The translations under genes and the position numbers were made by a program. Of a stretch of 64,000 nucleotides of DNA, positions 3,001 to 44,852 are shown piece after piece; the first letter of the stretch is position 1, and every line of letters starts with the position of its first letter. This stretch comes from Phallusia mammillata (taxonomy: Eukaryota). The notes under the pieces are model-generated. The model was given only the letters and a program-made list of their open reading frames with translations. It was not told the origin of the DNA and did not search any database. The stretch spans positions 4,340,001-4,404,000 of the forward strand of contig OZ281498.1 of the NCBI GenBank assembly GCA_965637545.1, read 5' to 3'.

Positions 3001-6000
3001 GTTTATTGACGAATCTCCTGAATGATTTTCTGATATCGATTTTGGAAAAACTTCCAATTTTCGAACCATTTTGAAACTTTTAACTGAATTCAAAAGTCCA
3101 CTTTAACATAAGACGTCGTTAAAAATACTCACAAAAAATGTCTGCCCTTTGAAGTTCAACAAATCTGGGTTGCTTACATTTAAAATGATTTGGTAAAGAT
3201 CATTGGTATTACACAACAGTTCAAAGTTTTAAACAAATTTTTATGAATCAGGTACAAGGGTAAAATTGGGGGAATCACCGGAATTTTACCAGCTGTCTAC
3301 GTTGAAGTCGTCGTTGAACCGGAGTCAGCCGAAGCGACAAAGACCAAACCAAAAGTTCCGAAAGAATTAGAGGTTTCGCCTAAGACGACGACGTCACCGC
3401 GTACCACGTCATCATTGTCGTCACAGCATTCGCACTCGCTCAGTCAAGCAAGTTCAAACAGCGACCCTGACGGTACGTTTTAGTGCAGTTTTGTCCACTA
3501 TAAATCATAGTAGGCTACGTCAGGCATATTAAAGGGGAAAATCTACTGACACCATAACTCACGTCAGTCGCACATTTAGCTAATTTTCGACAGGTGGCGC
3601 AAAGAGCACAAATCTGATTGAAAACGGAATATTTCAAAATATGCCTGCGGTTAGGGCTATTAGGGTTTTGGCTAGGTATGATCATTATAAATTCAGTGAA
3701 ACTAACCCAAAAATTTTAGTTCTTAAAGTAAAATAAACTTACTTCCCAACCCTACCCCTATTTAGCCGCTAAATAAATAATTAAGCTCCTGCGCCTTCGA
3801 TGGAAAATTAGCTAAATGTGAGGCTGACGTAAGTTATGGCAAAGCACATGGTTAAAACATCTACCGGTGGGATTTTTCATCCACGACACAACCCTTTTCG
3901 GGACTTGCGCTCTACCAACTAAACTACACAGGCTCAGTGATGAAGCCGCTGAAGGTCACATCATAAGCACCGTTGCCCTCCTCGTATGCTGCACATGTTT
4001 TTAGAGAGATTTTACAAGATTTAGGACATCCTTGTTTAAGTTTCTCTCTCTTTGACACAAATTTATTTATGAATTCCACTGGTTTGGTGACTTTTGCGCG
4101 TTTTTGTTTGGACTTCTACGCACTTGAATGTATAAATGGTGGCTAAAATGTTAAGGTGGTCAAAATGTTGTGGCCTGTTGCTTGATCTTTTTAGCTCGGT
4201 GCAATTGCCCCCACTAGATGGCCGAAAAAGGTCAAATAACTAAACGAGGAAGTAGGAAGTTTGCTGAATTAAAGGAAGTTTGCTAGATTACTGTCCATTT
4301 TATTGAACTTTTTTAAAATGAGCCTATGGTAGTGTTCGGATTTATAATTGTAGTGTTCTAGCTTTTCCAGGGCCTATAATATCGAAATAATTTATCCTTA
4401 TCGCTTTTATTATGGGTCCCCTTCCCTGAAGGGACACATATTGATTTTACTCAAATTGTTTGTTTTCTTTTTTTTCTTTTTTTTTTCTTTCTTTTTTTTT
4501 CTTCCCAAAGTTTGTCCGACTCGTTTTTCCATCAAATGTTTGATGGATTTGGCCGAAATTTACACAGATGGTAGATATAGTTATGTAGATGTGCATCCCA
4601 CTTTTTTGTTGTTGATAACCCCAGTATTTACCCCGCTAGCCCCCTAAAATGGGTATTTTTTCCCCGAAGTTTGTCCGACTCGTTTTTCCATCAAATGTTT
4701 GATGGATTTGGCTGAAATTTACACAGATGGTAGATATAGTTATGTAGATGTGCATCCCCATTTGTTTTTGTTGATAACCCCAGTATTTACCCCGCTAGCC
4801 CCCTAAAATGGGTGTTTTTTACCCAAAGTTTGTCCGACTCGTTTTTCCATCAAATGTTTGATGGATTTGGGTGAAATTTACACAGACGGTAGATATATTC
4901 ATGTAGATGTGCATACCACCTTGTTTTTGTTGATAACCCCAGTAATTACCCCGCTAGCCCCCTAAAATGGGTGAGTTTTTAAACAGTGTCAAATGGATAG
5001 CTTGTATAGTATGCCATTTATAGGTGTCGATTGTTGTGTTCAACCCTGTAGTCCTAACATTTACCCCACAAGCCCCTAAAGTGTAAAACGTATTTGTATG
5101 TTACTGGGCATCACAAACGAAAGATTTCTGTGGCGCAATAGTGTTACAAGGGCAACCAGTTGTATGTTGCTCGTTGGTGGGTTGCTTGGTGGACGTTTTT
5201 GCGTGGCAGTTAGGGGCTTGGTAACAGCCCTATGACGTCAGAAACATTAACGGTTGTTGCTCAAAACACCTCTAGTGGTCGAAATTTTTGAACATTGGCG
5301 GATTTGGCTGAAAGTTTGCAGTACTATTGATTAAGTCATTGTGGTTTTTTAGTTTGTGTGTCGAACCCAATTAGTTACCCTACTAGCCCCCTAAAATGGG
5401 TCAGTTTTTTAAAACGATAAATAGGACATACTTCAAACAATATCTGGGGTGAATCTAATTTTATAGTTTGTATTCTACATAGTATTATTATTTATGCCCA
5501 GTGCCGATCACTGTGTTTTACCTTACAACACCCGACTTTCTCATGGTTATCTCTTGAATTGCATTATTTTCAACTTTGCATGTGTGGGGACCCATGAGTT
5601 TTTGCCTGCAGAAACGACTAAGGTTATAAAAGACGATGGCTAATATGGGACCCAATACAAAATAAGCATAGGAAATATATTACTGTTTTAAAATAGGTTA
5701 TAGTGTAAATGCAACAACAAAATGTGCTAACCAACCCTTCTAGTTTGATTACATTTTGTTTCCTTTACCAGAAAACGAACGCAAACAGCGCGCTGCCTTT
5801 CTTGCTCACTCTGTCGTAGACGCAACAGTCCAACTCCAGCCCAAAGACTCGCACAAACATAGAGGAGAATTTGACTTATCCGAGCTCGACCGAGTTGTTG
5901 ACGCGCTCAACGAACCGCAAGCAACCACCGGGACTGATGGGAATTTCCCAGCACCCCCACCCGCTCAAACCCTTCTCGCCCCATCTGTTCCTTCTTACCC

Positions 6001-36650: not shown

Positions 36651-38195
36651 TTGTGTTAGAATTATTGCTTAGCCGGAAAAAAAATTGCCAAGCAAAACAA
36701 TGTTTGCCCAAATTATCCTATTCCACAATTCGTTAAAACTGTGTTCTGTCGGATTTTTAGGCAAGTAAACTTCGAATATGTGTCCCGGTATATATAGTTT
36801 TTGAGTTGGTAAGATGTATTGTTAATCTGTCAAACGCACCTCAACCAAACTATTTCCTGCATAATTTTACAGTCCACTAATGACAAGTTAGCATGTCCGG
36901 TTCCGCTGCTTGCGAGGTATAAGTCATCATGAATTAAGAAGCTGTGTTAATGCACATTAATAACCACAAGTGTCCCTATCTCATTAGTCCTAACTGTGTG
37001 CATTTTCGAAGAAGTCGGAAAAACTAAAATATTGCAACAAGGGCTTAGCGGACTGATTAAATAAGTGCGCTTGGGCACAGACTATAGGAGGGCTAATTGT
37101 GCTTTGTGGCCTAAGCGGTCGTGCAATTTTAGACGTTATCCCCTTTAGGCTATGTTTTTTACTATTGAGATCCAAACCAATGGCACCTCCCTCCTCGGGG
37201 TTCCATCCAGGACCAGGAGGCTCTCGGGAACGAATCCCGGTCAAGCTGGACCATTGGGCCAAATTTCTTCCATGACGTGCCCGTTCTTTTGTTTTTAAAA
37301 ATCACATAATTTACGCTTTTTATGTATGGTGTTGGGGTGCAATATATTCATATTGAGCGAAAGTAGGCATAAATTACCTTTTTAAGTTGTAAGTTTTCAT
37401 TTTGTCGAAAAATGATCTGCATAGCAAAAAGTATGATGTCTATGTGGAAAAAACTGCCTATCAGAAGCACCCATGCGTTACGATTGCAGATTTGCTCTGT
37501 ATATCTTTCCTATTTGTATTTTTTTGTATTAATTTTAAAACCGGGCATGAAAAATAATTAGCACTGAAAGAAGCAGAATTTAGGTGTTTGAGAAATTCCT
37601 TACTGATTGTAACTGCATAGCATTTAACTTTTTTTAACCGCAAAGTATTTTCATGGTCTTAGATTAGACCAGGGGTGGGGAACCTTTTTGTTTATAAAGG
37701 CCACCAAACGGTTTGTTGACACTCGTTTAGGCCGCATAGACTATTTCCCAGGCCAAGGACAGTGGTGTTCAATCTTTTTGACTTACAGAATGGTCGTTTG
37801 CTATTCCCTCGTAACTTGCGGTCTAAGCTGCAACAGGGGTTGTGACTTTTTCATGACACTTGTCACTGTTAGTGACAGGCGTCAATGACAGGGCTGGGGT
37901 GTCACTAAATCAGTGACAGGGCGTCACTAAATCAGTGACAGGGCGCCATTAAATCAGTGACAGGGCAAAATCAGTGACAGGGCAAAATCAGTGACAGGGG
38001 GTTCTTGCGTTCTTGCGATAGTATGAACACAAGCGAATTTATTAGGTCTTTGCTTGTAAGGGTTTTCTTTAAAAATTGCAAGCAGCAAAGGTTTTAAATG
38101 TAAATTTCGTGCAAAAATGTACCTCATGACTTTAATTTTTTGGTATAATCTTTAAATTCTGCAAGCAGCAAAGGTAAGTGTGTTTTTGAACATTT

Positions 38196-38254
38196 TTGAA
38201 CTTTCATTGCCTGCCAGGCAGTCTGATGAGCTCTAACAGGGCGAAAAAGTTCAA
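38196..38254 (+). ncRNA. Type III hammerhead ribozyme
   Basis: TTGAACTTT-C-ATTGCC-TGCCA-GGCAGT-CTGATGA-GCTC-TAACA-GGGC-GAA-AAAGTTCAA. This gives a perfect 9-bp stem III, a UUC cleavage triplet (cut after 38205), a 6-bp stem I, an intact CUGAUGA/GAAA core and a 4-bp stem II closed by G-C. Confidence 0.9.
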
Positions 38255-39354
38255 TCAATTTGTTTTAAGTAGTTTTTTTTTATTATGTAAACATGTCTAA
38301 CCTCTGTTTTGTGCCACATTGTCATATCTGAATATTTAACAATATGTAATGTTATGTGCAAAAAGAGGAGTTTATCTGAGTTTCCAAACAAAAAAACGTT
38401 TTGTACACATGAAGATCAACACGTTTAAAGCTGCGTAAAAAAATAGTGCATCTAGAATTTCCTAGCTTCAGGACAATGTTACGCGTGGTAATGTCTTTTT
38501 ACCCATTTAAACTGATTCTGCCATATTTACACAAAAAATTGTTGATGTTTTTTGTTTTATTTTTTTTGCAGACAGCCACAAACATTTAACGATTGGAAAC
38601 CCAAGATTTAAAGATAACCAAGATTAACACAAGTATTTGGTTGTTGTTATTGGTGTTTGAGGTGTTGTATTTAATTGCACCTTTGAATTGTGTGCACATA
38701 TTTGTAATTGTCAATGTCTACTTGGAAATTTAAGTTTATACATTATATAACCAGAGATTTAAAAAAATACTGTGTTTAGACAAAATAAAGAAAAAAACAA
38801 CTGCAAATGAATCACCATGTTTCGAGTTTGTTAAAAGGGGTTAAATGGCTAAAAAACAAAAATAAGTTTAATATGGTTCATTATTTTAAAGTTATTTTGT
38901 GGCCAACTTAGCCAATTATATTCACTCTGTGCGATAAATTTCTAAGTGTGTTTAAATTGGTATGGATGTTTTATGTGTTTGTTAGGTTAGGAATTCCATA
39001 GGTTCTGTAATTTAAATAGCTTGTTACCTGGTAAACAATCAAATTCATTGAGTTCGCAAATTTCATTTGGCCACATGGGCAGGAAGAGTCCAGAAGCTTT
39101 GATGAAAGCTGACCAGAAGCAGAACTGCTCTACTGATCTTTCACATGTATGTGTTCGAGCAATCAATAATTGTAGTTCTGTAGTGAATAATGTATTACTG
39201 ATTCAATAATTCTTGTGTATAACAGTATTTTACTTTAAAATCTCTTATTTGTTGAAATATTTTCAAGTCCGAGTCAGAAAATGCTCTTTTTGTTCATTCT
39301 ACAAAAACGTTTTTATTACACACAGTGATTTGTTACCAAATGTGTTATTTCAGG

Positions 39355-41150
39355 ATGGTGTATCAGCAAGCAAGTCAATATCTTACAAGATGCACATGTT
39401 TTAGACTCTCCACAGAGTATGAGGTGTGTTGAAGGTTTAAATGGTTCAGTAAATTTAAAGTCCATTTTTCAATGGTTTTACTAGCTCTGCTGTAAAATAT
39501 TGTCATGTGATGAGTTTTATCAAAATCCTAAATTTAACTATAAGCATGCACTAATGAGTTGTGCAATTTTTGTTTTAGTTAAGCATTTGCAATTGCAAGC
39601 ACATACTGCGCATGACTATTGGTGAACGTCATTCAGTTGTCAACCCACAAAGATGGCTCTGCAACACTTGCCTTACAACTGAGTCTGTTTGGACATGTCT
39701 AAGCTGCCCTAATGTTGCTTGTGGAAGGTAGGAACCATGGTCAAAACACAAAACAAAATGTTCTACAGTCTATAAAAATGAATAAATAATGTGTGGACTG
39801 TTTTGGATGGCCATTTGAGTATTAATAAAATGGTATATAACCTACAGATATATCCATGAACATGCATTAAACCATTATTTGGAATCTGGTCATCCATTAG
39901 TGATTGATGTCAATGAACTCTATGTATATTGCTATGCTTGTGAAGAATATGTTCTCAATGACAACAAATCGGGGGACATCAAGGTGCTACGTGAAACTTT
40001 ACAGGTAGGCAAATTTGGGTTATTATCTTTTTTAAATTGTAGTTGTGTCAGTCCAAACAATTCTGTGGCATGGTTTCTTGGTCGGAAATTGCCTGGAAAA
40101 TAATTTATGTTGTATCATGTGACAAAAAGTATTAGCTCATAAATTCTGTTTGTAAAATTTCAATAATATTAAGTTAAACAATTTAGGCTGCTTTTGTGCA
40201 GTAGGTAAAATTTGAACAGTTTATGTATTGTGTGCCATAGTAAATATTAAAACTTCAATCAGAAATTCTTAACATTTCTCCAGGCAATTAGATACCAAAA
40301 CTTTACTGGCACAACTCGTAGTGGACACACACTGAGGACAGCCACAATAAGTGCAGATGAAGATGTTCAAATGAGGAGAAGATTACAGCAGCAACAACTT
40401 GATAGAGATGATAGACTTTTCACTGCCATTTGGCATTCAAGGTACTTTTTCACACAGTAAAAGTGCACAAAATTGTGTTACTCCAAAAATTCGATGCCCA
40501 AATTTGCCAATTTTCATAAGATTACATAATTTTAATTTTTTTTGTCTTTACTATGTAGGTTTGTTCGACAAAGAAAAACCTTCAGAAACTGGCGGAACTA
40601 TGTTTGTAACAAGGACCAACACTGTCAGAGTGATGACGAACTACCATGTGCTACAGTCCCACTACAGTGAAACACAGAACTACAAGAAGACTTCATTGGA
40701 AAACTCGATGACCACCTTGAAACCTTGTCAGAATTAAAGATCTGCAACAAGTTAATGCTGATTTTCCATTAAACACAGAAAGGAAGGGGATTGATACAAG
40801 GTTAATAAGGGAAATTACACTTGATCCTGTTTAAGGTGTTTTACCAGCATTATCTGTTGTGTGGCAGTGCAAGGTCTGATTATGTGGAAAAAATCAATAC
40901 TGGTGTCTTATTTCAGTAAAACACCATCTCCAGACTGTTCTGTATTTACTCTATCCAAATTGAATACCACATTTCGTTTTTTTAGGTGCTCGGTCATTTG
41001 CAAAAGTTCCGCCGATGTTTACTTGCCGTTCGTGACATCGAAATGGATGAAACCACTGGGTGCTACGAAGATCCACAAGTTTCGCCATCAAGCAAGTTAC
41101 GAGTCGCTGGAAGAAGGTCCACCATAGAAATAAGAGCCATGGCATTTTAG
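39355..41150 (+). pseudogene. USP44: Captured, intron-containing 5' fragment of USP44/USP49 deubiquitinase (ZnF-UBP domain; catalytic domain truncated)
   Basis: Exons ~39584-39728, 39848-40004, 40284-40441, 40559-.. and 40987-41150 give [125 protein letters not shown] and VLGHLQKFRRCLL. There is an in-frame TGA at 40668-40670, no intact GLxNLGNTCY Cys box, and a stop at 41148-41150. The start codon is tentative. Confidence 0.85.
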
Positions 41151-41915
41151 CAGGCTAGTCTTTTGCCAGAAACAATTTATTCGAGCAACTGCTTGTATAC
41201 AGAAAATACTTACATCTCATGACAACTCAGGTTTACTTGTAGTAGGGATTTGACTTGAGGACTCAAGTCTAAATCAATGACATTTCTTAGAAATAAGGAA
41301 AATAAAGTTTTTAAAGACCTTGCCTTTCAAAATAAGGTCAAGTCTTCGAAATAAGAATAGGATGGCGACCCTGAGTATAAGATATGCAATATAATTAAGG
41401 CAAGTTTAAATCGTTTTATGTAAACAAGGCACTAAACTTTACCAGTTTTAGTTCAATTCCACACAGACTATTAAGATTTTACTTATAGCCTCACTCATGT
41501 TGGTAGTGTACCTCACACTGTGCTTCACGGACAAAGCGCCTCATGGCGATATTCCTGACATATAACTTCTCAATATGGCTGTAGACTAGCCTGCTAAAAT
41601 GCCATGGCTCTTATAAATGCAAAGCTTTGTTTCATTTGGTATGAAAATGTATTGGTAAGACCATTAAATATTTTCTAGTCTTGGCAATGTCCTGTTTGCT
41701 TATAAATTGTGATGTTATGGATGTGTGTATTGGTTTATTCTATTTGTTGTTTTCTTAACTGAAGTCTGTCCACACCAGATGGTAGATATGGTCATGTAAA
41801 TGTGCCATAACAGCTCCAGTATTTAACCCACTGGCAGCCCAAGTTATAAACCTTTCTTATAATCCGACACACTCCGGGCTGGTTGCTTTGGCAGTTTTGA
41901 CAGCCTGAAACAATG

Positions 41916-42196
41916 GGTGGTACTAAATACTGCATGTTACCGTATGTTATTCTGCTTAAAATACTGCATGGTATGTGAAATGCGAGAATACAAGCCCCAA
42001 CAAGGGAAAATTAGACCAGATTATAGTATTGTTTTAATTACAAACCTTCACCCAACCAGAATAGCTCTAACCGTTAGCGCTTTCAAAAGTTCGCAAAACT
42101 TTATTTTCGTAAAAGCATATTCAAGTCCTTTACAACTTCCTGCCGTGTTATAACATGCGGTATACCATGCGGTCACATGCGGTATTTAGTACCACC
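41916..42196. mobile_element. Small MITE
   Basis: TIRs GGTGGTACTAAATACTGCATG / CATGCGGTATTTAGTACCACC. A related half copy lies near 44425-44455. Confidence 0.65.
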
Positions 42197-42699
42197 GGAA
42201 ACAATCGCCTATCAGCGTTACAATTTAAAAGTGTTGATTGGGTGATTGTGGTTTGATTTTTTATTATTTTGCACGTAGCATCCCCCCTAAGATGGGTATT
42301 TTTTTTTGAATTTTAAGTGTCAATTGCATTGTCACAGGAGAGTATTAATCTATATACTGAAAGCTAGAGAATATCGTGTGCTTGCTTAGCTTTTTAAGTT
42401 CTTTATCACACCTTGCCTTCACTTTAAGCATTCATAAATTCGTTGTTTTTTGTTCAGTAATAAAAGCTGTCTGAAATAGTTTGTCATGCTTTAGAATTAC
42501 TGTAAAAGTTTTTGTACCAACACCAATATTTTTGGAAAACTCAAAACAAAAGCTAGTTAAAACAAACAAAAGAGTCAAAGTCAATGCTGTAGTCCGGGGA
42601 CCCCTGGGGCAATTTCTCCCATCTATCTTGATTCTTTGCTAGTCTGTTGTATTCCATGATCTATTTTCCTGTCCACCCCTGAACATTGCCAAAGCCTGT

Positions 42700-43390
42700 T
42701 CGTTCTGGGCCTGCCTTGTGTTCTTATTCCCTCGCCGGTCCTGTGCATGATGGTGTGTGTAAGAGTTCTATGGCGACATGTTACATGGCTAACCCATTAA
42801 AGCTACGTTAAACAAGATTGGCGACAGTATGCACTCTTGAAATACTCCAAAGTCTTAAACTATTTTAGTGCACTTCCATTGGTTAACACAGCATTGATGA
42901 CCTTTATATTATACAGTGATTTGATCAGGAGGATCAGGAAGAGACTGATACCATGTTTCTTCATGGTGCTCCAAAGGGCCTCTGTGACCAAGTTCTTGAT
43001 GGTGGTCTCTTTTTTTCACCTAGTATTCAATCTGTTAGACCAGTGGTTCTCAAGACTGTAGACTGTACCATCATGTTCTTCCCTTGTTTGTTCTTCAGAT
43101 AAGACACTCTTGATTTGAGGTATTAGTTTACCTTTCTTGGTATCATGACTATCAAAGATTGTGTCCACGTGGGCCACACTTATCTCATATGTATTCAAGA
43201 TCTCCTGTGTTATCCAGCAAGGCTGCTTTCTGGTTCCAGCCTTTTCCAAAGTTTTCATCACAGTCGCATTCATGATTTTAGAGAACTCAGATGTTAATTC
43301 TTCAACATTATTTTCCAACAGTGCATCAAATCTGCTTTCAATCTTTATTTCAAACCCCTTTCTGCAACCTGGCTCTTCAAACGACAAAGG
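42700..43390 (-). mobile_element. Degenerate RTE-like LINE fragment
   Basis: Minus-strand remnants ESRFDALLENNVEELTSEF..KQPCWITQEILN and EALWSTMKKHGI..LIKSLY..CILSPILFNV (RT domain), with stops and frameshifts. Confidence 0.6.
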
Positions 43391-44852
43391 AAAAATACTC
43401 TTTTTTTTTCAAAAAATATAAATCAGTGACAGGGCGTCAGTGAATCAGTGACAGGGTGTCAGTAAATCTGTGACAGGGTGTCAAAATCAGTGACAGGGCG
43501 TCAGTGAATCAGTGACAGGGCGTCAGTGAATCAGTGACAGGGTGTCAATAAATCTGTGACAGGGTGTCAGTAAATTTGTGACCTACCGACAGGGTGTCAG
43601 TAAATCTGTGACAGGGTGTTATTGACAGGCGATAGGTGACAGCCTGTCACTGAATTGTCACAACCCCGCCTCCCAAGCTGAATACAATTCCTCTGGCTTG
43701 TTTGCAAATATCGATGATCTAAGGCCAGCTTGTGACATCAAAGACGTGTTTAAGACATTCGATTATGCGCTAACAATTGTTCTATTGCAAGACAAGTAAG
43801 ATTGTAGAACCTACGGAAATCGCTTCGTGCACCACAACGGGACCATTTGGCCGCAGCCCTAGAACTAATCCAATAGTAATGTGGAATTAATGTCAAAAAA
43901 TACGTTTCTGTATATTTTTCAGCGCCTGGTGCAGTTTGTAATATCAACATCGTAATATTTATTCTGACGTCGAAGGCAGCACGTAGTGCCTCAAAGGCCG
44001 CATGCGGCCTTTAGGCCGCAGGTTCCCCACCCCTGAATTAGACTAACTTCAAATAATGGCAGACCAACATGTTTTTATGTTTATTCTATTCTAAAGAAAA
44101 GTGATTTTCCTAAAAACAAACAGCATCCTCCAAAAAATGTATCCAAGAATTTTTATAACTGAGAAGTATGTTAAACTAAAGAATCCAGCAACCAATAATA
44201 TTTTTACAATCCAAATACCATTGTCATTTCATTCTTAAATTTTTTGGCTAAAAATTTGAATGAAGTCAAATATAATTTGGGCTGTAAAATATGCAATCTA
44301 CTAATAAAACTAATGAAGATGTTGATGGGTAGGGCTTTCAGGGTCAGGTGAGGGTGAGTAATTACAGTAACATTAAATATCAATTTTAGATACTCTTCTG
44401 AGCCTAATATTTGTACAAGTTTTAACATGCGAAACCATATGGTGTTTAGTACCACTAGGGGGTATATATATATATGAGATTTAATTGTAGTGTTTTTTTA
44501 CAAACCCCGTACCAGACCCTAAAAGCCCTAACCATTCTTTTAGTTGGGCCGAAAATATTTTCTGACAACTATTTTCTTAACTAAGTTTGTTACATAAAGC
44601 TACTTAGTTGCCCCTGAAGCTAAAGCTTTACATTTACAAAATGACCTTATTGCCATTGAAGATGTAAGTTTCAGTAGGAGCTGCAATGTGATGCATTCTG
44701 TTAAGTTTGTGTCTTTCTGTTTTATGTTAAACATTGGCTATATATAGATGGTGATTGGCATCAGTGATTTTATTACTTATGGTACTATATGATTTTTTTT
44801 GTTTTCTAGCTGTGGACTACTATACAGTTGAAAAAAGCTTTGGTATAAAGCT

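What the first reader, a model, noticed from the sequence alone, without database searches (positions are those of the whole stretch)
37670..44035. Pack-type hAT composite that has captured an intron-containing USP44/49 gene fragment
Seen: 16-bp TIRs and an 8-bp TSD bound 6.4 kb. Inside is a second element with GGGGTTGTGAC termini and AATCAGTGACAGGG arrays at both ends. The cargo is the ZnF-UBP exons of USP44/49 with their introns, a hammerhead, an RTE fragment, HINE fragments and a MITE. Retained introns imply DNA-level capture, not retroposition. The ubiquitin-binding ZnF exons are open while the catalytic part is broken. Inference: Pack-MULE-like gene transduction by hAT elements in a tunicate, which could yield a ZnF-UBP-only decoy protein or antisense/siRNA regulation of the parent gene.
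Basis: partly seen in the sequence, partly recalled or inferred. Interest (0 to 1): 0.72.

Follow-up and report, generated by a model that had tools for sequence, protein, structure and literature searches.

The report
Gene-carrying transposon nested in a MITE
A 5.8-kb enzyme-less jumping element, present about 25 times in this genome, carries the front part of a deubiquitinase (USP44/49) gene with its introns, and this copy landed inside a small older transposon; it is a large animal example of a known kind of gene capture, and this scan had already met the family on other DNA.

Summary
The outer 16-bp inverted ends (37670-85 / 44020-35) belong to an ordinary ~530-bp hAT-type MITE with hundreds of copies. 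The mobile unit is the inner element, 37831-43672 (5,842 bp). It has fixed ends CAACAGGGGTTGTGAC...GTCACAACCCCGCCTC and 14 subterminal AATCAGTGACAGGG units, and no transposase domain was found in it. It inserted into that MITE with an 8-bp duplication.

About 25 copies with unrelated flanks differ by 0.4-1.5% in the cargo. The cargo (38632-41131) is the upstream region plus six exons, with introns, of a USP44/49 homologue. An intact full-length gene lies on G000:C4 at ~23.0 Mb.

Cargo and that gene differ by 50 synonymous but only 20 non-synonymous changes (zinc-finger exons 28 versus 1). Among the copies, variants are 36 non-synonymous to 7 synonymous. So the capture was recent, from a diverged functional homologue, and the cargo now drifts.

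This copy belongs to the minority with an intact zinc finger.

It is a multicopy Pack-type transposon, not a composite. The scan found the same family earlier on other DNA (s1-353678, s1-364038).

The parts
37662..37669 (.). Left target-site duplication of the outer MITE (GATTAGAC)
   Evidence: Matches 44036-44043 (AATTAGAC) at 7/8. Other copies of the same MITE have 8-bp duplications, five of them perfect.
37670..37830 (+). Left part of the outer ~530-bp hAT-type MITE, including the 16-bp TIR at 37670-37685
   Evidence: 441 first-look candidates in the genome. L012 carries the uninterrupted copy: 37670-37830 and 43673-44035 adjoin there with an 8-bp overlap.
37823..37830 (.). Left copy of the 8-bp target-site duplication made by the inner element (CTAAGCTG)
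   Evidence: The right copy is CCAAGCTG at 43673-43680. L012 has a single CCAAGCTG.
37831..43672 (+). Inner non-autonomous Pack-type DNA transposon, 5,842 bp; this is the mobile unit
   Evidence: Homology to more than 20 other copies starts and stops exactly here, with unrelated flanks. About 25 copies in all. No transposase domain in its ORFs; the longest ORF is 123 aa.
37831..37846 (+). Left terminus CAACAGGGGTTGTGAC
   Evidence: 56 exact occurrences in the genome and none for the control pattern. Identical in all copies read.
37906..38008 (+). Left subterminal array, 5 units of AATCAGTGACAGGG at 17-22-bp spacing
   Evidence: Repeat family D2.
38147..38171 (+). End of a transcribed backbone exon; its donor is spliced to 38570/38571
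   Evidence: GT..AG joint 38171>38570 in an RNA-like contig of run X14.
38198..38252 (+). Hammerhead type III-like motif inside the backbone intron
   Evidence: Rfam RF00008, 36 bits, E 7.4e-5, under the gathering score of 48.5. Conserved in all copies, and also present outside the element at L025:5759-5823.
38632..41131 (+). Captured cargo: upstream region, exons and introns of a USP44/49 homologue
   Evidence: Colinear with the C4 gene at positions 273-2458, 3810-3875 and 4009-4356 of its reverse complement, at 83% identity with gaps. Two internal segments are missing relative to that gene.
39075..39146 (+). Cargo exon E1, holding the parental ATG
   Evidence: Parent ORF alignment. Joint 39146>39354.
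39354..39423 (+). Cargo exon E1b. A 2-nt deletion relative to the C4 gene is shared by all copies, and a new in-frame ATG sits at 39355
   Evidence: Joints 39146>39354 and 39421>39577. Alignment to the copies and the parent.
39579..39727 (+). Cargo exon E2, first half of the ZnF-UBP domain
   Evidence: Pfam zf-UBP profile positions 1-22. Joint 39725>39846.
39848..40004 (+). Cargo exon E3, second half of the ZnF-UBP domain; uninterrupted in this copy
   Evidence: Pfam zf-UBP positions 25-62, 43.4 bits. USP49 zinc finger, PDB 9yc2, E 7.9e-19. Most other copies have a MITE inserted at 39867-39874.
40284..40441 (+). Cargo exon E4
   Evidence: Amino-acid sequence identical to the C4 gene. Joints 40001>40281 and 40439>40557.
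40559..40800 (+). Cargo exon E5, with an in-frame TGA at 40668-40670 shared by all copies
   Evidence: joint 40798>40984.
40986..41131 (+). Cargo exon E7, a piece of the catalytic domain downstream of the stop and not usable
41133..41611 (.). TA-flanked MITE-like insert at the 3' edge of the cargo
   Evidence: 39-nt inverted repeat I1, 92% complementary. Flanking TA read in the sequence.
41916..42196 (.). Second MITE-like unit
   Evidence: 40-nt inverted repeat I2. A related end lies at 44423-44455, outside the element.
43016..43387 (-). LINE-like antisense ORF (123 aa), part of the backbone
   Evidence: ORF list. No Pfam family. Weak Atlas leads to RVT_1 and endonuclease clusters. The region is shared at 71-81% identity with the cargo-less relative on C3.
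43419..43625 (+). Right subterminal array, 9 units, in the same orientation as the left array
   Evidence: Repeat family D2.
43657..43672 (+). Right terminus GTCACAACCCCGCCTC
   Evidence: 17 exact occurrences in the genome, none for the control.
43673..44035 (+). Right part of the outer MITE, including the right copy of the inner duplication (43673-43680) and the TIR at 44020-44035
   Evidence: 97.5% identical to L012:1664-2029.
44036..44043 (.). Right target-site duplication of the outer MITE (AATTAGAC)

Best explanation
ARCHITECTURE
This is a nested insertion, not a composite.
1. A ~530-bp hAT-type MITE sat at this site, with 16-bp inverted ends and an 8-bp duplication.
2. A 5,842-bp non-autonomous DNA transposon (37831-43672) then inserted into it, duplicating 8 bp (CTAAGCTG / CCAAGCTG).

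THE ELEMENT
- It is a Pack-type (transduplicating) transposon.
- Its backbone supplies the termini, the subterminal AATCAGTGACAGGG arrays, a transcribed first exon and a LINE-like piece.
- The arrays are presumed binding sites for a transposase supplied in trans.
- Its middle (38632-41131) is 2.5 kb copied as DNA from a USP44/49 deubiquitinase gene: about 440 bp upstream of the ATG, exons E1, E1b, E2, E3, E4, the start of E5, and exon E7, with their introns.

HISTORY
1. Before it spread, the cargo had already lost the catalytic Cys-box exon. It had also gained a 2-nt frameshift in E1b and a stop codon in E5.
2. It then transposed to about 25 sites very recently; copies differ by 0.4-1.5%.
3. 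Most copies descend from a derivative in which a second hAT MITE split exon E3 and a zinc-ligand cysteine became tyrosine.
4. This copy belongs to the older minority that keeps the zinc finger intact.

EXPRESSION AND SELECTION
- The family is transcribed from the backbone and spliced at the parental splice sites.
- The coding sequence has drifted neutrally since capture. The open zinc-finger exons therefore reflect youth, not function.
- The donor was a functional USP44/49 homologue about 12% diverged at neutral sites from the gene now on C4. It was not that allele.

SHOWN: structure, copy number, duplications, parent gene, splicing, substitution patterns.
INFERRED: the hAT superfamily (from the 8-bp duplication only), mobilisation in trans, capture by gap repair or template switching, and the origin of the donor.
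For: MOBILE UNIT AND NESTING
- Other copies align only to 37831-43672 and have unrelated flanks.
- L012 shows the same MITE uninterrupted, with a single CCAAGCTG.
- A second copy (C5:17335208-17341527) has a perfect 8-bp duplication, GTAGTATG.
- Other copies of the outer MITE have 8-bp duplications, five of them perfect.

COPY NUMBER
- 23 places hold exon E3.
- 23 full-length matches to the left 834 bp, and about 26 to the right 2.5 kb.
- 56 exact left termini against 0 for the control pattern.
- Pairwise divergence in the cargo is 0.004-0.015; divergence from the C4 gene is 0.124. The window copy branches next to the root.

PARENT GENE
- The C4 locus carries ZnF-UBP exons plus UCH profile positions 1-18, 83-145 and 194-254 in successive ORFs.
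- Exon E3's closest solved relative is the USP49 zinc finger.

NO ENZYME
- The longest ORF is 123 aa, and no transposase domain was found.

SELECTION
- Cargo against the C4 gene: 50 synonymous and 20 non-synonymous differences, omega 0.09. In ZnF exons E2-E4 it is 28 against 1, omega 0.008.
- The unusable exon E7 shows 9 against 2.
- Among copies there are 36 non-synonymous and 7 synonymous variants, a ratio of 1.4.

EXPRESSION
- GT..AG joints at 38171>38570, 39146>39354, 39421>39577, 39725>39846, 40001>40281, 40439>40557 and 40798>40984.
- They occur in contigs of three transcriptome-sized runs from three studies.

BACKBONE VERSUS CARGO
- A cargo-less relative on C3 matches 38089-38637 and 41677-43672 but nothing between.

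PRECEDENT
- Pack-TIRs are known in animals and are mostly hAT (PMC8277862).
Against: - The inverted ends are poor: 11 of 16 terminal bases pair, and the outermost 5 do not.
- One of three testable copies (in L042) has no duplication.
- No autonomous partner was found. hAT dimerisation-domain hits lie near family termini only once, which is about what chance gives. P-element hits lie near none. The superfamily therefore rests on the duplication length alone.
- The runs called RNA are guessed to be RNA, and they are assembled contigs. They cannot show the strand, the level of expression or which copy is expressed.
- The contigs over 42154-43472 carry an 11-nt stretch that this copy lacks, so they come from other copies.
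- Synonymous divergence (0.32-0.36) exceeds intron divergence (0.13), which is unexplained.
- The genome search scores only the best candidates, so a second USP44/49 locus cannot be strictly excluded.
Confidence: 0.88

Rival explanations
1. One reading: the outer hAT ends and the inner element form one 6.4-kb Pack-type hAT unit that captured the gene fragment and moves as a whole.
For: - Perfect 16-bp outer inverted ends and a 7/8 flanking duplication bound the whole 6.4 kb.
Against: - No other copy of the cargo carries the outer ends. All of them end at 37831 and 43672 with different flanks.
- The outer MITE exists uninterrupted elsewhere (L012), with the insertion point intact.
Confidence: 0.02
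2. A decayed resident USP44/49 gene, or a mis-assembly, invaded by unrelated MITEs.
For: - Exons, introns and canonical splice sites look like an ordinary gene.
Against: - About 25 near-identical copies lie on seven of the large contigs.
- An intact full-length gene lies elsewhere.
- All copies share fixed termini and internal deletions.
Confidence: 0.01
3. The cargo is a working gene. The ZnF-intact copies, this one included, encode a roughly 214-codon ZnF-UBP-only protein from the new ATG at 39355 that acts as a ubiquitin-binding decoy. Alternatively, the transcripts regulate the resident USP44/49 through small RNAs.
For: - The family is transcribed and correctly spliced.
- In this copy the frame is open from 39355 to the TGA at 40668, checked exon by exon.
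- A T-for-C change creates an ATG just upstream of the shared frameshift.
- One joint (39725>39846, at least 47 letters on each side) crosses the point where most copies carry a MITE, so a ZnF-intact copy is probably expressed.
- The exons are 87-95% identical to the resident gene.
Against: - Variants among copies are 36 non-synonymous to 7 synonymous.
- At least 18 of 22 other copies carry a MITE in E3 and a zinc-ligand Cys>Tyr change.
- An upstream ORF from the old ATG overlaps the new one.
- The two sister ZnF-intact copies already carry P>S and R>C changes.
- No small-RNA or protein data were examined.
Confidence: 0.07
4. The cargo was copied directly from the C4 gene long ago, and the zinc-finger exons were kept by selection on the element itself.
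For: - The C4 gene is the only other USP44/49 locus found.
- The ZnF exons show 28 synonymous differences against 1 non-synonymous.
Against: - Exon E7 shows the same constraint (9 synonymous against 2 non-synonymous), yet it lies after a stop codon and lacks the catalytic Cys-box exon, so it is useless in the element.
- Since amplification the exons evolve neutrally.
Confidence: 0.1

Closest known systems
Pack-TIR elements of animals, especially Pack-hAT (Tan et al. 2021, Nat Commun 12:4280, PMC8277862)
   Same: - A non-autonomous terminal-inverted-repeat transposon.
- An internal host-gene fragment copied as DNA, with introns kept.
- A parental locus elsewhere that is not linked to the transposon.
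- Target-site duplications, and transcription of the cargo.
   Different: - That survey found only 4 multicopy cases among 370; its worked example has three copies of a 291-bp 5'UTR piece.
- Here there are about 25 copies of a 2.5-kb, multi-exon fragment.
- The resident gene is not the direct donor.
- The superfamily here is inferred only from the 8-bp duplication.
Pack-MULEs of plants (as described in the introduction of PMC8277862; original papers recalled from memory)
   Same: - Gene-fragment capture between transposon ends.
- Amplification of the captured fragment.
- Frequent transcription.
- Mostly non-functional coding capacity.
   Different: - Mutator superfamily, with long inverted ends and 9-10-bp duplications.
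- This element has short, imperfect ends and an 8-bp duplication.
- The host is an animal.
Ssk-FB4, the multicopy Foldback-mediated capture in Drosophila melanogaster (PMC8277862)
   Same: - A multicopy animal element that carries an exon-intron gene segment and spreads by transposition.
   Different: - A Foldback element with long repetitive arms, polymorphic in populations.
- Here the ends are short with subterminal arrays, and the polymorphism status is unknown.
Human USP49 / USP44 ZnF-UBP domain (PDB 9yc2)
   Same: - Exon E3 aligns over 51 residues at E 7.9e-19. This is far better than HDAC6, USP33, USP16 or Ubp8 fingers.
   Different: - The cargo holds only the N-terminal finger and linker, plus one stray catalytic exon.
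- It has no Cys box.

Membership tests
Pack-type (transduplicating) TIR transposon | Transposon termini of one family at both ends, shared by independent copies | tested here: met
   All copies read share the identical ends CAACAGGGGTTGTGAC... and ...GTCACAACCCCGCCTC. The genome holds 56 and 17 exact terminal 16-mers against 0 for the controls.
Pack-type (transduplicating) TIR transposon | Target-site duplication and distinct flanks at each copy (transposition after capture) | tested here: met
   - The flanks differ in every copy.
- 8-bp duplication at 7/8 here, with a paralogous empty site in L012.
- 8/8 at C5:17335208-17341527, and none at the L042 copy.
Pack-type (transduplicating) TIR transposon | Internal sequence derived from a host gene whose parental locus is not transposon-linked, with introns retained | tested here: met
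   The cargo is colinear with the C4 gene through exons and introns. The parent's first 272 nt and the sequence after position 4356 are unrelated to the element. Caveat: the C4 gene is 12% diverged and is probably not the direct donor.
Pack-type (transduplicating) TIR transposon | No transposase of its own | tested here: met
   The longest ORF is 123 aa. No transposase family appears in 11 non-cargo ORFs.
hAT superfamily (inner element) | 8-bp target-site duplication | tested here: met
   Two of three testable copies.
hAT superfamily (inner element) | Short inverted ends of the usual hAT type (about 10-25 bp, starting YARNG; recalled from memory) | tested here: inconclusive
   The ends are 16 nt with an 11-nt perfect core, but the outermost 5 nt differ (CAACA versus GAGGC). 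One copy, C1:15959602-15965401, has the left-type 16-mer at both ends.
hAT superfamily (inner element) | An autonomous partner with the same termini that encodes a hAT transposase | tested here: inconclusive
   Of the 150 best PF05699 hits, only C1:15387366 and C1:15400144 lie about 7.4 kb inside left termini. They are one duplicated segment, and about 0.5 such coincidences are expected by chance. The roughly 30 other left termini could not be read.
P-element superfamily (alternative with 8-bp duplications) | A P transposase near the family termini | tested here: not met
   None of 14 PF12017 hits lies within 50 kb of a family terminus.
hAT-type MITE (outer element) | Short inverted ends, 8-bp duplications, small size, high copy number | tested here: met
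   - 16-bp ends.
- 490-660-bp copies with 8-bp duplications, five of them perfect, mostly with TA at the centre.
- 441 first-look candidates in the genome.
USP44/49 deubiquitinase (cargo as a gene) | N-terminal ZnF-UBP closest to USP44/49 | tested here: met
   Pfam zf-UBP spread over E2 and E3. The USP49 finger is the best PDB match.
USP44/49 deubiquitinase (cargo as a gene) | Complete UCH catalytic domain with Cys and His boxes | tested here: not met
   The Cys-box exon and all exons after E7 are absent from the element. They are present in the C4 gene.
Hammerhead ribozyme type III (RF00008) | Score at or above Rfam's gathering threshold | tested here: not met
   36 bits against 48.5, E 7.4e-5. 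The core CUGAUGAG...CGAAA and three helices are present.

The most novel reading that the evidence does not exclude
The cargo was captured from the USP44/49 gene of another lineage, either a sister species or a paralogue since lost. The element then entered this genome by hybridisation or horizontal transfer and burst to about 25 copies. Its sense transcripts are 87-95% identical to the resident mRNA in the exons. They could now feed small-RNA regulation of the resident deubiquitinase, or the few ZnF-intact copies could make a ZnF-UBP-only protein. A run labelled as a different organism (X12) holds the element at about 99% identity with its own flank, which fits this reading but does not show it.
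Probability: 0.15. Interest if true: 0.7.

Novelty: new member of a known kind. Interest (0 to 1): 0.55.

Why it matters
- Gene capture by DNA transposons is well documented in plants but thought to be mostly single-copy and small in animals. The one broad survey found 4 multicopy cases among 370 (PMC8277862).
- This family has about 25 copies, is recently active, and carries 2.5 kb with six exon segments (E1, E1b, E2-E5, E7). It is still transcribed and spliced. That makes it a usable natural system for asking how such captures arise and what they do to the parent gene.
- The substitution pattern dates the capture as recent and points to a donor other than the resident gene. This makes cross-species transfer directly testable.
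- For this window specifically, the practical result is a corrected annotation: a nested insertion, with the paralogous empty site giving clean proof of the 8-bp duplication.

Tried and rejected
FETCHING MORE GENOME SEQUENCE
- As a result I could not read the C3 tandem array, the roughly 30 family left termini without cargo, or the second flank of most copies.
- I did not try to pull those letters out by pattern searches.

LOOKING FOR THE AUTONOMOUS PARTNER BY CO-LOCATION
- hAT dimerisation domain (PF05699): one chance-level coincidence.
- P-element transposase (PF12017): none.
- Mutator and other superfamilies were not searched.

CHECKING THE 'RTE' CLAIM
- The 123-aa antisense ORF has no Pfam family.
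- It has only weak Atlas leads, 0.80-0.85, to RVT and endonuclease clusters.
- LINE-like is plausible; the clade is not shown.

LITERATURE
- No paper on gene-carrying transposons in ascidians turned up.

SPLICED MODEL
- Exons were searched one by one by reference, and frame continuity was checked from exon lengths and phases only.

REJECTED READINGS
- The composite-vehicle reading, the decayed-resident-gene reading and segmental duplication were all rejected, for the reasons given under rival explanations and in the full report.

NOT RUN
- Complex prediction, structure prediction and the large protein searches were not used. The family scans left nothing open that they would settle.

Full report
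1. WHAT IS AT THE COORDINATES

CAGGGGTGGGGAACCT at 37670-37685 is the exact inverted complement of 44020-44035. The flanking octamers are GATTAGAC and AATTAGAC, a 7/8 match rather than a perfect one.

Inside lie the GGGGTTGTGAC / GTCACAACCCC cores (37836, 43657-43667). There are also 14 units of AATCAGTGACAGGG, five at 37906-38000 and nine at 43419-43625, all in the same orientation.

The exons translate to a ZnF-UBP. Pfam zf-UBP positions 1-22 fall in 39579-39725 and positions 25-62 in 39849-40004. The best solved relative of the second exon is the USP49 zinc finger (PDB 9yc2, E 7.9e-19). The next best matches, HDAC6, USP33, Ubp8 and USP16, are far weaker.

Rfam finds one hammerhead type III match at 38198-38252. 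It scores 36 bits, E 7.4e-5, which is under the family's gathering score of 48.5.

2. WHICH PART IS MOBILE

Exon E3 occurs at 23 places in the 240-Mb assembly at 94-100% amino-acid identity. I aligned the window to the loci around those places. Homology always begins at 37830/37831 and ends at 43672.

Every copy begins CAACAGGGGTTGTGAC and ends GTCACAACCCCGCCTC, and beyond those ends the flanks are unrelated. The genome holds 56 exact left 16-mers and 17 exact right 16-mers. The control patterns give none. The mobile unit is therefore 37831-43672.

The outer ends are a different matter. The left 144-166 bp has 441 first-look candidates in the genome. Locus L012 holds the same MITE uninterrupted. 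There, window 37670-37830 and 43673-44035 abut with an 8-bp overlap, read as a single CCAAGCTG. The window has CTAAGCTG before the inner element and CCAAGCTG after it.

Other copies of this MITE are 490-660 bp and carry 8-bp duplications, five of them perfect, mostly with TA at the centre. The 6.4-kb 'composite' is therefore one hAT-type MITE split by a later insertion.

Of three inner-element copies whose two flanks I could read:
- the window copy has a 7/8 duplication;
- C5:17335208-17341527 has a perfect one, GTAGTATG;
- the copy in L042 has none.

3. THE PARENT GENE AND WHAT WAS CAPTURED

One E3 match is not an element copy. At G000:C4:~23,008,911 (minus strand), E3 is 100% identical in protein, but the surrounding DNA is only 78-83% identical.

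The reverse complement of L021+L002 carries a full gene:
- the ATG exon and a second small exon;
- three ZnF/linker exons;
- a long exon of about 290 codons;
- a Cys-box exon (GLRNLGNTCY);
- ORFs covering UCH profile positions 83-145 and 194-254, down to the His box.

The window aligns to positions 273-2458, 3810-3875 and 4009-4356 of that locus. The cargo (38632-41131) therefore holds:
- about 440 bp upstream of the ATG;
- exons E1, E1b, E2, E3 and E4;
- the first 60 codons of the long exon;
- an intron piece and exon E7.

It lacks the rest of the long exon and the Cys-box exon.

All copies share three defects or changes relative to the C4 gene:
- a 2-nt deletion in E1b;
- a T-for-C change that creates an ATG at 39355, in the ZnF frame;
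- an in-frame TGA at 40668.

These arose before the family spread.

4. BACKBONE VERSUS CARGO

Searches with the two non-cargo ends found a related sequence family at 72-81% identity. It is arranged as a head-to-tail array of about 24 units with a ~3,722-bp period, at C3:19.56-19.65 Mb and on contig C40. It matches window 38089-38637 and 41677-43672 and nothing between.

The hammerhead region and the LINE-like antisense ORF (43016-43387) therefore belong to the transposon backbone, not to captured cargo. The cargo, together with a TA-flanked MITE at 41133-41611, occupies the place of about 900 bp in the relative.

No ORF in the element exceeds 123 aa, and none of 11 non-cargo ORFs matches a transposase family.

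5. AGE, SUBFAMILIES AND SELECTION

In the cargo region the copies differ by 0.4-1.5%, and all differ from the C4 gene by 12.4%. In a tree rooted on that gene the window copy branches first, followed by the C1:15.96 Mb and C8:10.16 Mb copies.

Every other copy I could read shares three derived changes:
- a ~490-bp hAT MITE (CAGTGGTTCTTAACC ends, duplication CATTAAAC) inserted in E3;
- a Cys>Tyr change at a zinc ligand in E2;
- a stop codon in E7.

At least 18 copies show the insert, the Cys>Tyr change, or both.

The substitution patterns before and after capture differ sharply.

| Comparison | Synonymous | Non-synonymous | Ratio |
|---|---|---|---|
| Cargo vs C4 gene, all coding segments | 50 | 20 | omega 0.09 |
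| Cargo vs C4 gene, ZnF exons E2-E4 | 28 | 1 | omega 0.008 |
| Cargo vs C4 gene, exon E7 | 9 | 2 | not computed |
| Distinct variants among copies | 7 | 36 | 1.4 |

Exon E7 cannot function in the element, yet it shows the same constraint as the ZnF exons. Nearly all the divergence from the C4 gene therefore built up while the cargo's ancestor was still a working gene. Since capture the cargo has drifted.

Two conclusions follow:
- The donor was a functional homologue about 12% diverged at neutral sites from the C4 gene. It could be a lost paralogue, a very divergent haplotype or another species.
- The zinc finger is open in this copy because the copy is young, not because it is selected.

One oddity is unexplained. 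Synonymous divergence (0.32-0.36) is higher than intron divergence (0.13).

6. EXPRESSION

Contigs of three transcriptome-sized runs from three studies were laid on 37750-43749. The tool only guesses that these runs are RNA. They show joints with GT..AG ends at:
- 38171>38570, a backbone intron that contains the hammerhead-like motif;
- 39146>39354 and 39421>39577;
- 39725>39846 and 40001>40281;
- 40439>40557 and 40798>40984.

They also reveal exon E1b and a transcribed backbone exon upstream of 38171, so transcription appears to start in the backbone.

The contigs cannot show strand, abundance or the copy of origin. Several come from other copies. Some begin in the E3 MITE, and those over 42154-43472 carry 11 nt that this copy lacks.

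The 39725>39846 joint has at least 47 letters on each side. It therefore runs past the MITE insertion point, which suggests that a ZnF-intact copy is also expressed.

With E1b included, the old ATG (39075) reads into a stop in E1b. The ZnF frame is open from the new ATG at 39355 to the TGA at 40668, 214 codons by exon lengths and phases.

A large run labelled as a different organism (X12) holds the element unspliced at about 99% identity with its own flank.

7. SUPERFAMILY AND PARTNER

The 8-bp duplication points to hAT, but other evidence is lacking. The termini pair at only 11 of 16 bases. One copy (C1:15959602-15965401) has the left-type 16-mer at both ends.

Among the 150 best hAT dimerisation-domain hits, only one duplicated segment lies near family termini, which is about the chance expectation. 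None of 14 P-element hits does.

About 30 left termini are not attached to cargo-bearing copies. One belongs to a 301-bp mini-element at C5:14620266-14620566.

8. COMPARISON WITH WHAT IS KNOWN

The element meets each defining feature of a Pack-type transposon: family termini, duplications with distinct flanks, a host-gene fragment with introns, an unlinked parental locus, and no transposase.

Tan et al. 2021 (PMC8277862) reported 370 Pack-TIRs in 100 animal genomes. Of these, 208 were hAT and only four were multicopy. Their worked example has three copies of a 291-bp fragment.

This family is larger in copy number (about 25) and in cargo (2.5 kb, six exon segments). Its resident homologue is not the direct donor. 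It is a new member of a known kind.

I found no report of it in ascidian literature. The scan itself had already met the family on two other stretches of this genome (s1-353678, s1-364038). Those notes reach the same conclusions, and I read them only after searches had established the structure independently.

9. VERDICT

- The gene-capture inference is supported.
- The composite architecture is rejected.
- The decoy-protein idea is disfavoured by the substitution pattern.
- The regulatory-RNA idea is untested.

Noticed in passing
G000:C3:19,560,750-19,652,069 and contig C40 (outside the window): A head-to-tail tandem array of about 24 units, period ~3,722 bp. The unit is a cargo-less relative of the element's backbone at 72-81% identity. 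Pack-type copies lie directly beside it at C3:19,656,126-19,667,360. This may be where the family arose.
   Followed up: partly
L005:1004-1502 and the same place in most other copies (window insertion point 39867-39874): A ~490-bp hAT-type MITE (CAGTGGTTCTTAACC ends, duplication CATTAAAC) sits inside zinc-finger exon E3 in the majority subfamily. The element kept transposing after its cargo was broken.
   Followed up: yes
G000:C1:15959602-15965401 (L003/L022 copy): This copy carries the left-type 16-mer CAACAGGGGTTGTGAC at both ends in inverted orientation, a perfect 16-bp TIR. All other copies read end in GCCTC.
   Followed up: partly
G000:C5:14620266-14620566: A 301-bp mini-element bounded by the family's left and right terminal 16-mers.
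   Followed up: no
L042 (G000:C4:10317684-10324035): A full-length copy without a target-site duplication: caaaaact on the left, gtgaaatg on the right. Unexplained; it may be a rearrangement between nearby copies.
   Followed up: no
window 38198-38252 and L025:5759-5823: The hammerhead-like motif lies in the backbone intron (38172-38569) that is spliced out of the element's transcripts. It also occurs outside the element in another locus, so it belongs to a separate repeat family.
   Followed up: partly
L029:1668-1688 (G000:C4:12349767): The last 21 nt of one copy's right end are separated from the rest of that copy by about 4.6 kb. This looks like a further nested insertion into the terminus.
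   Followed up: no
window 44325-44535 and 44423-44455: More MITE-like units lie just outside the outer MITE. There is a 30-nt inverted pair at 44325/44506. An end related to the unit at 41916-42196 lies at 44423-44455.
   Followed up: no
run X12 ('organism B'), laid on window 37750-43749: A 1.9-billion-letter run under a different organism label holds the element as unspliced low-depth contigs at about 99% identity, with a flank of its own after 43672.
   Followed up: no
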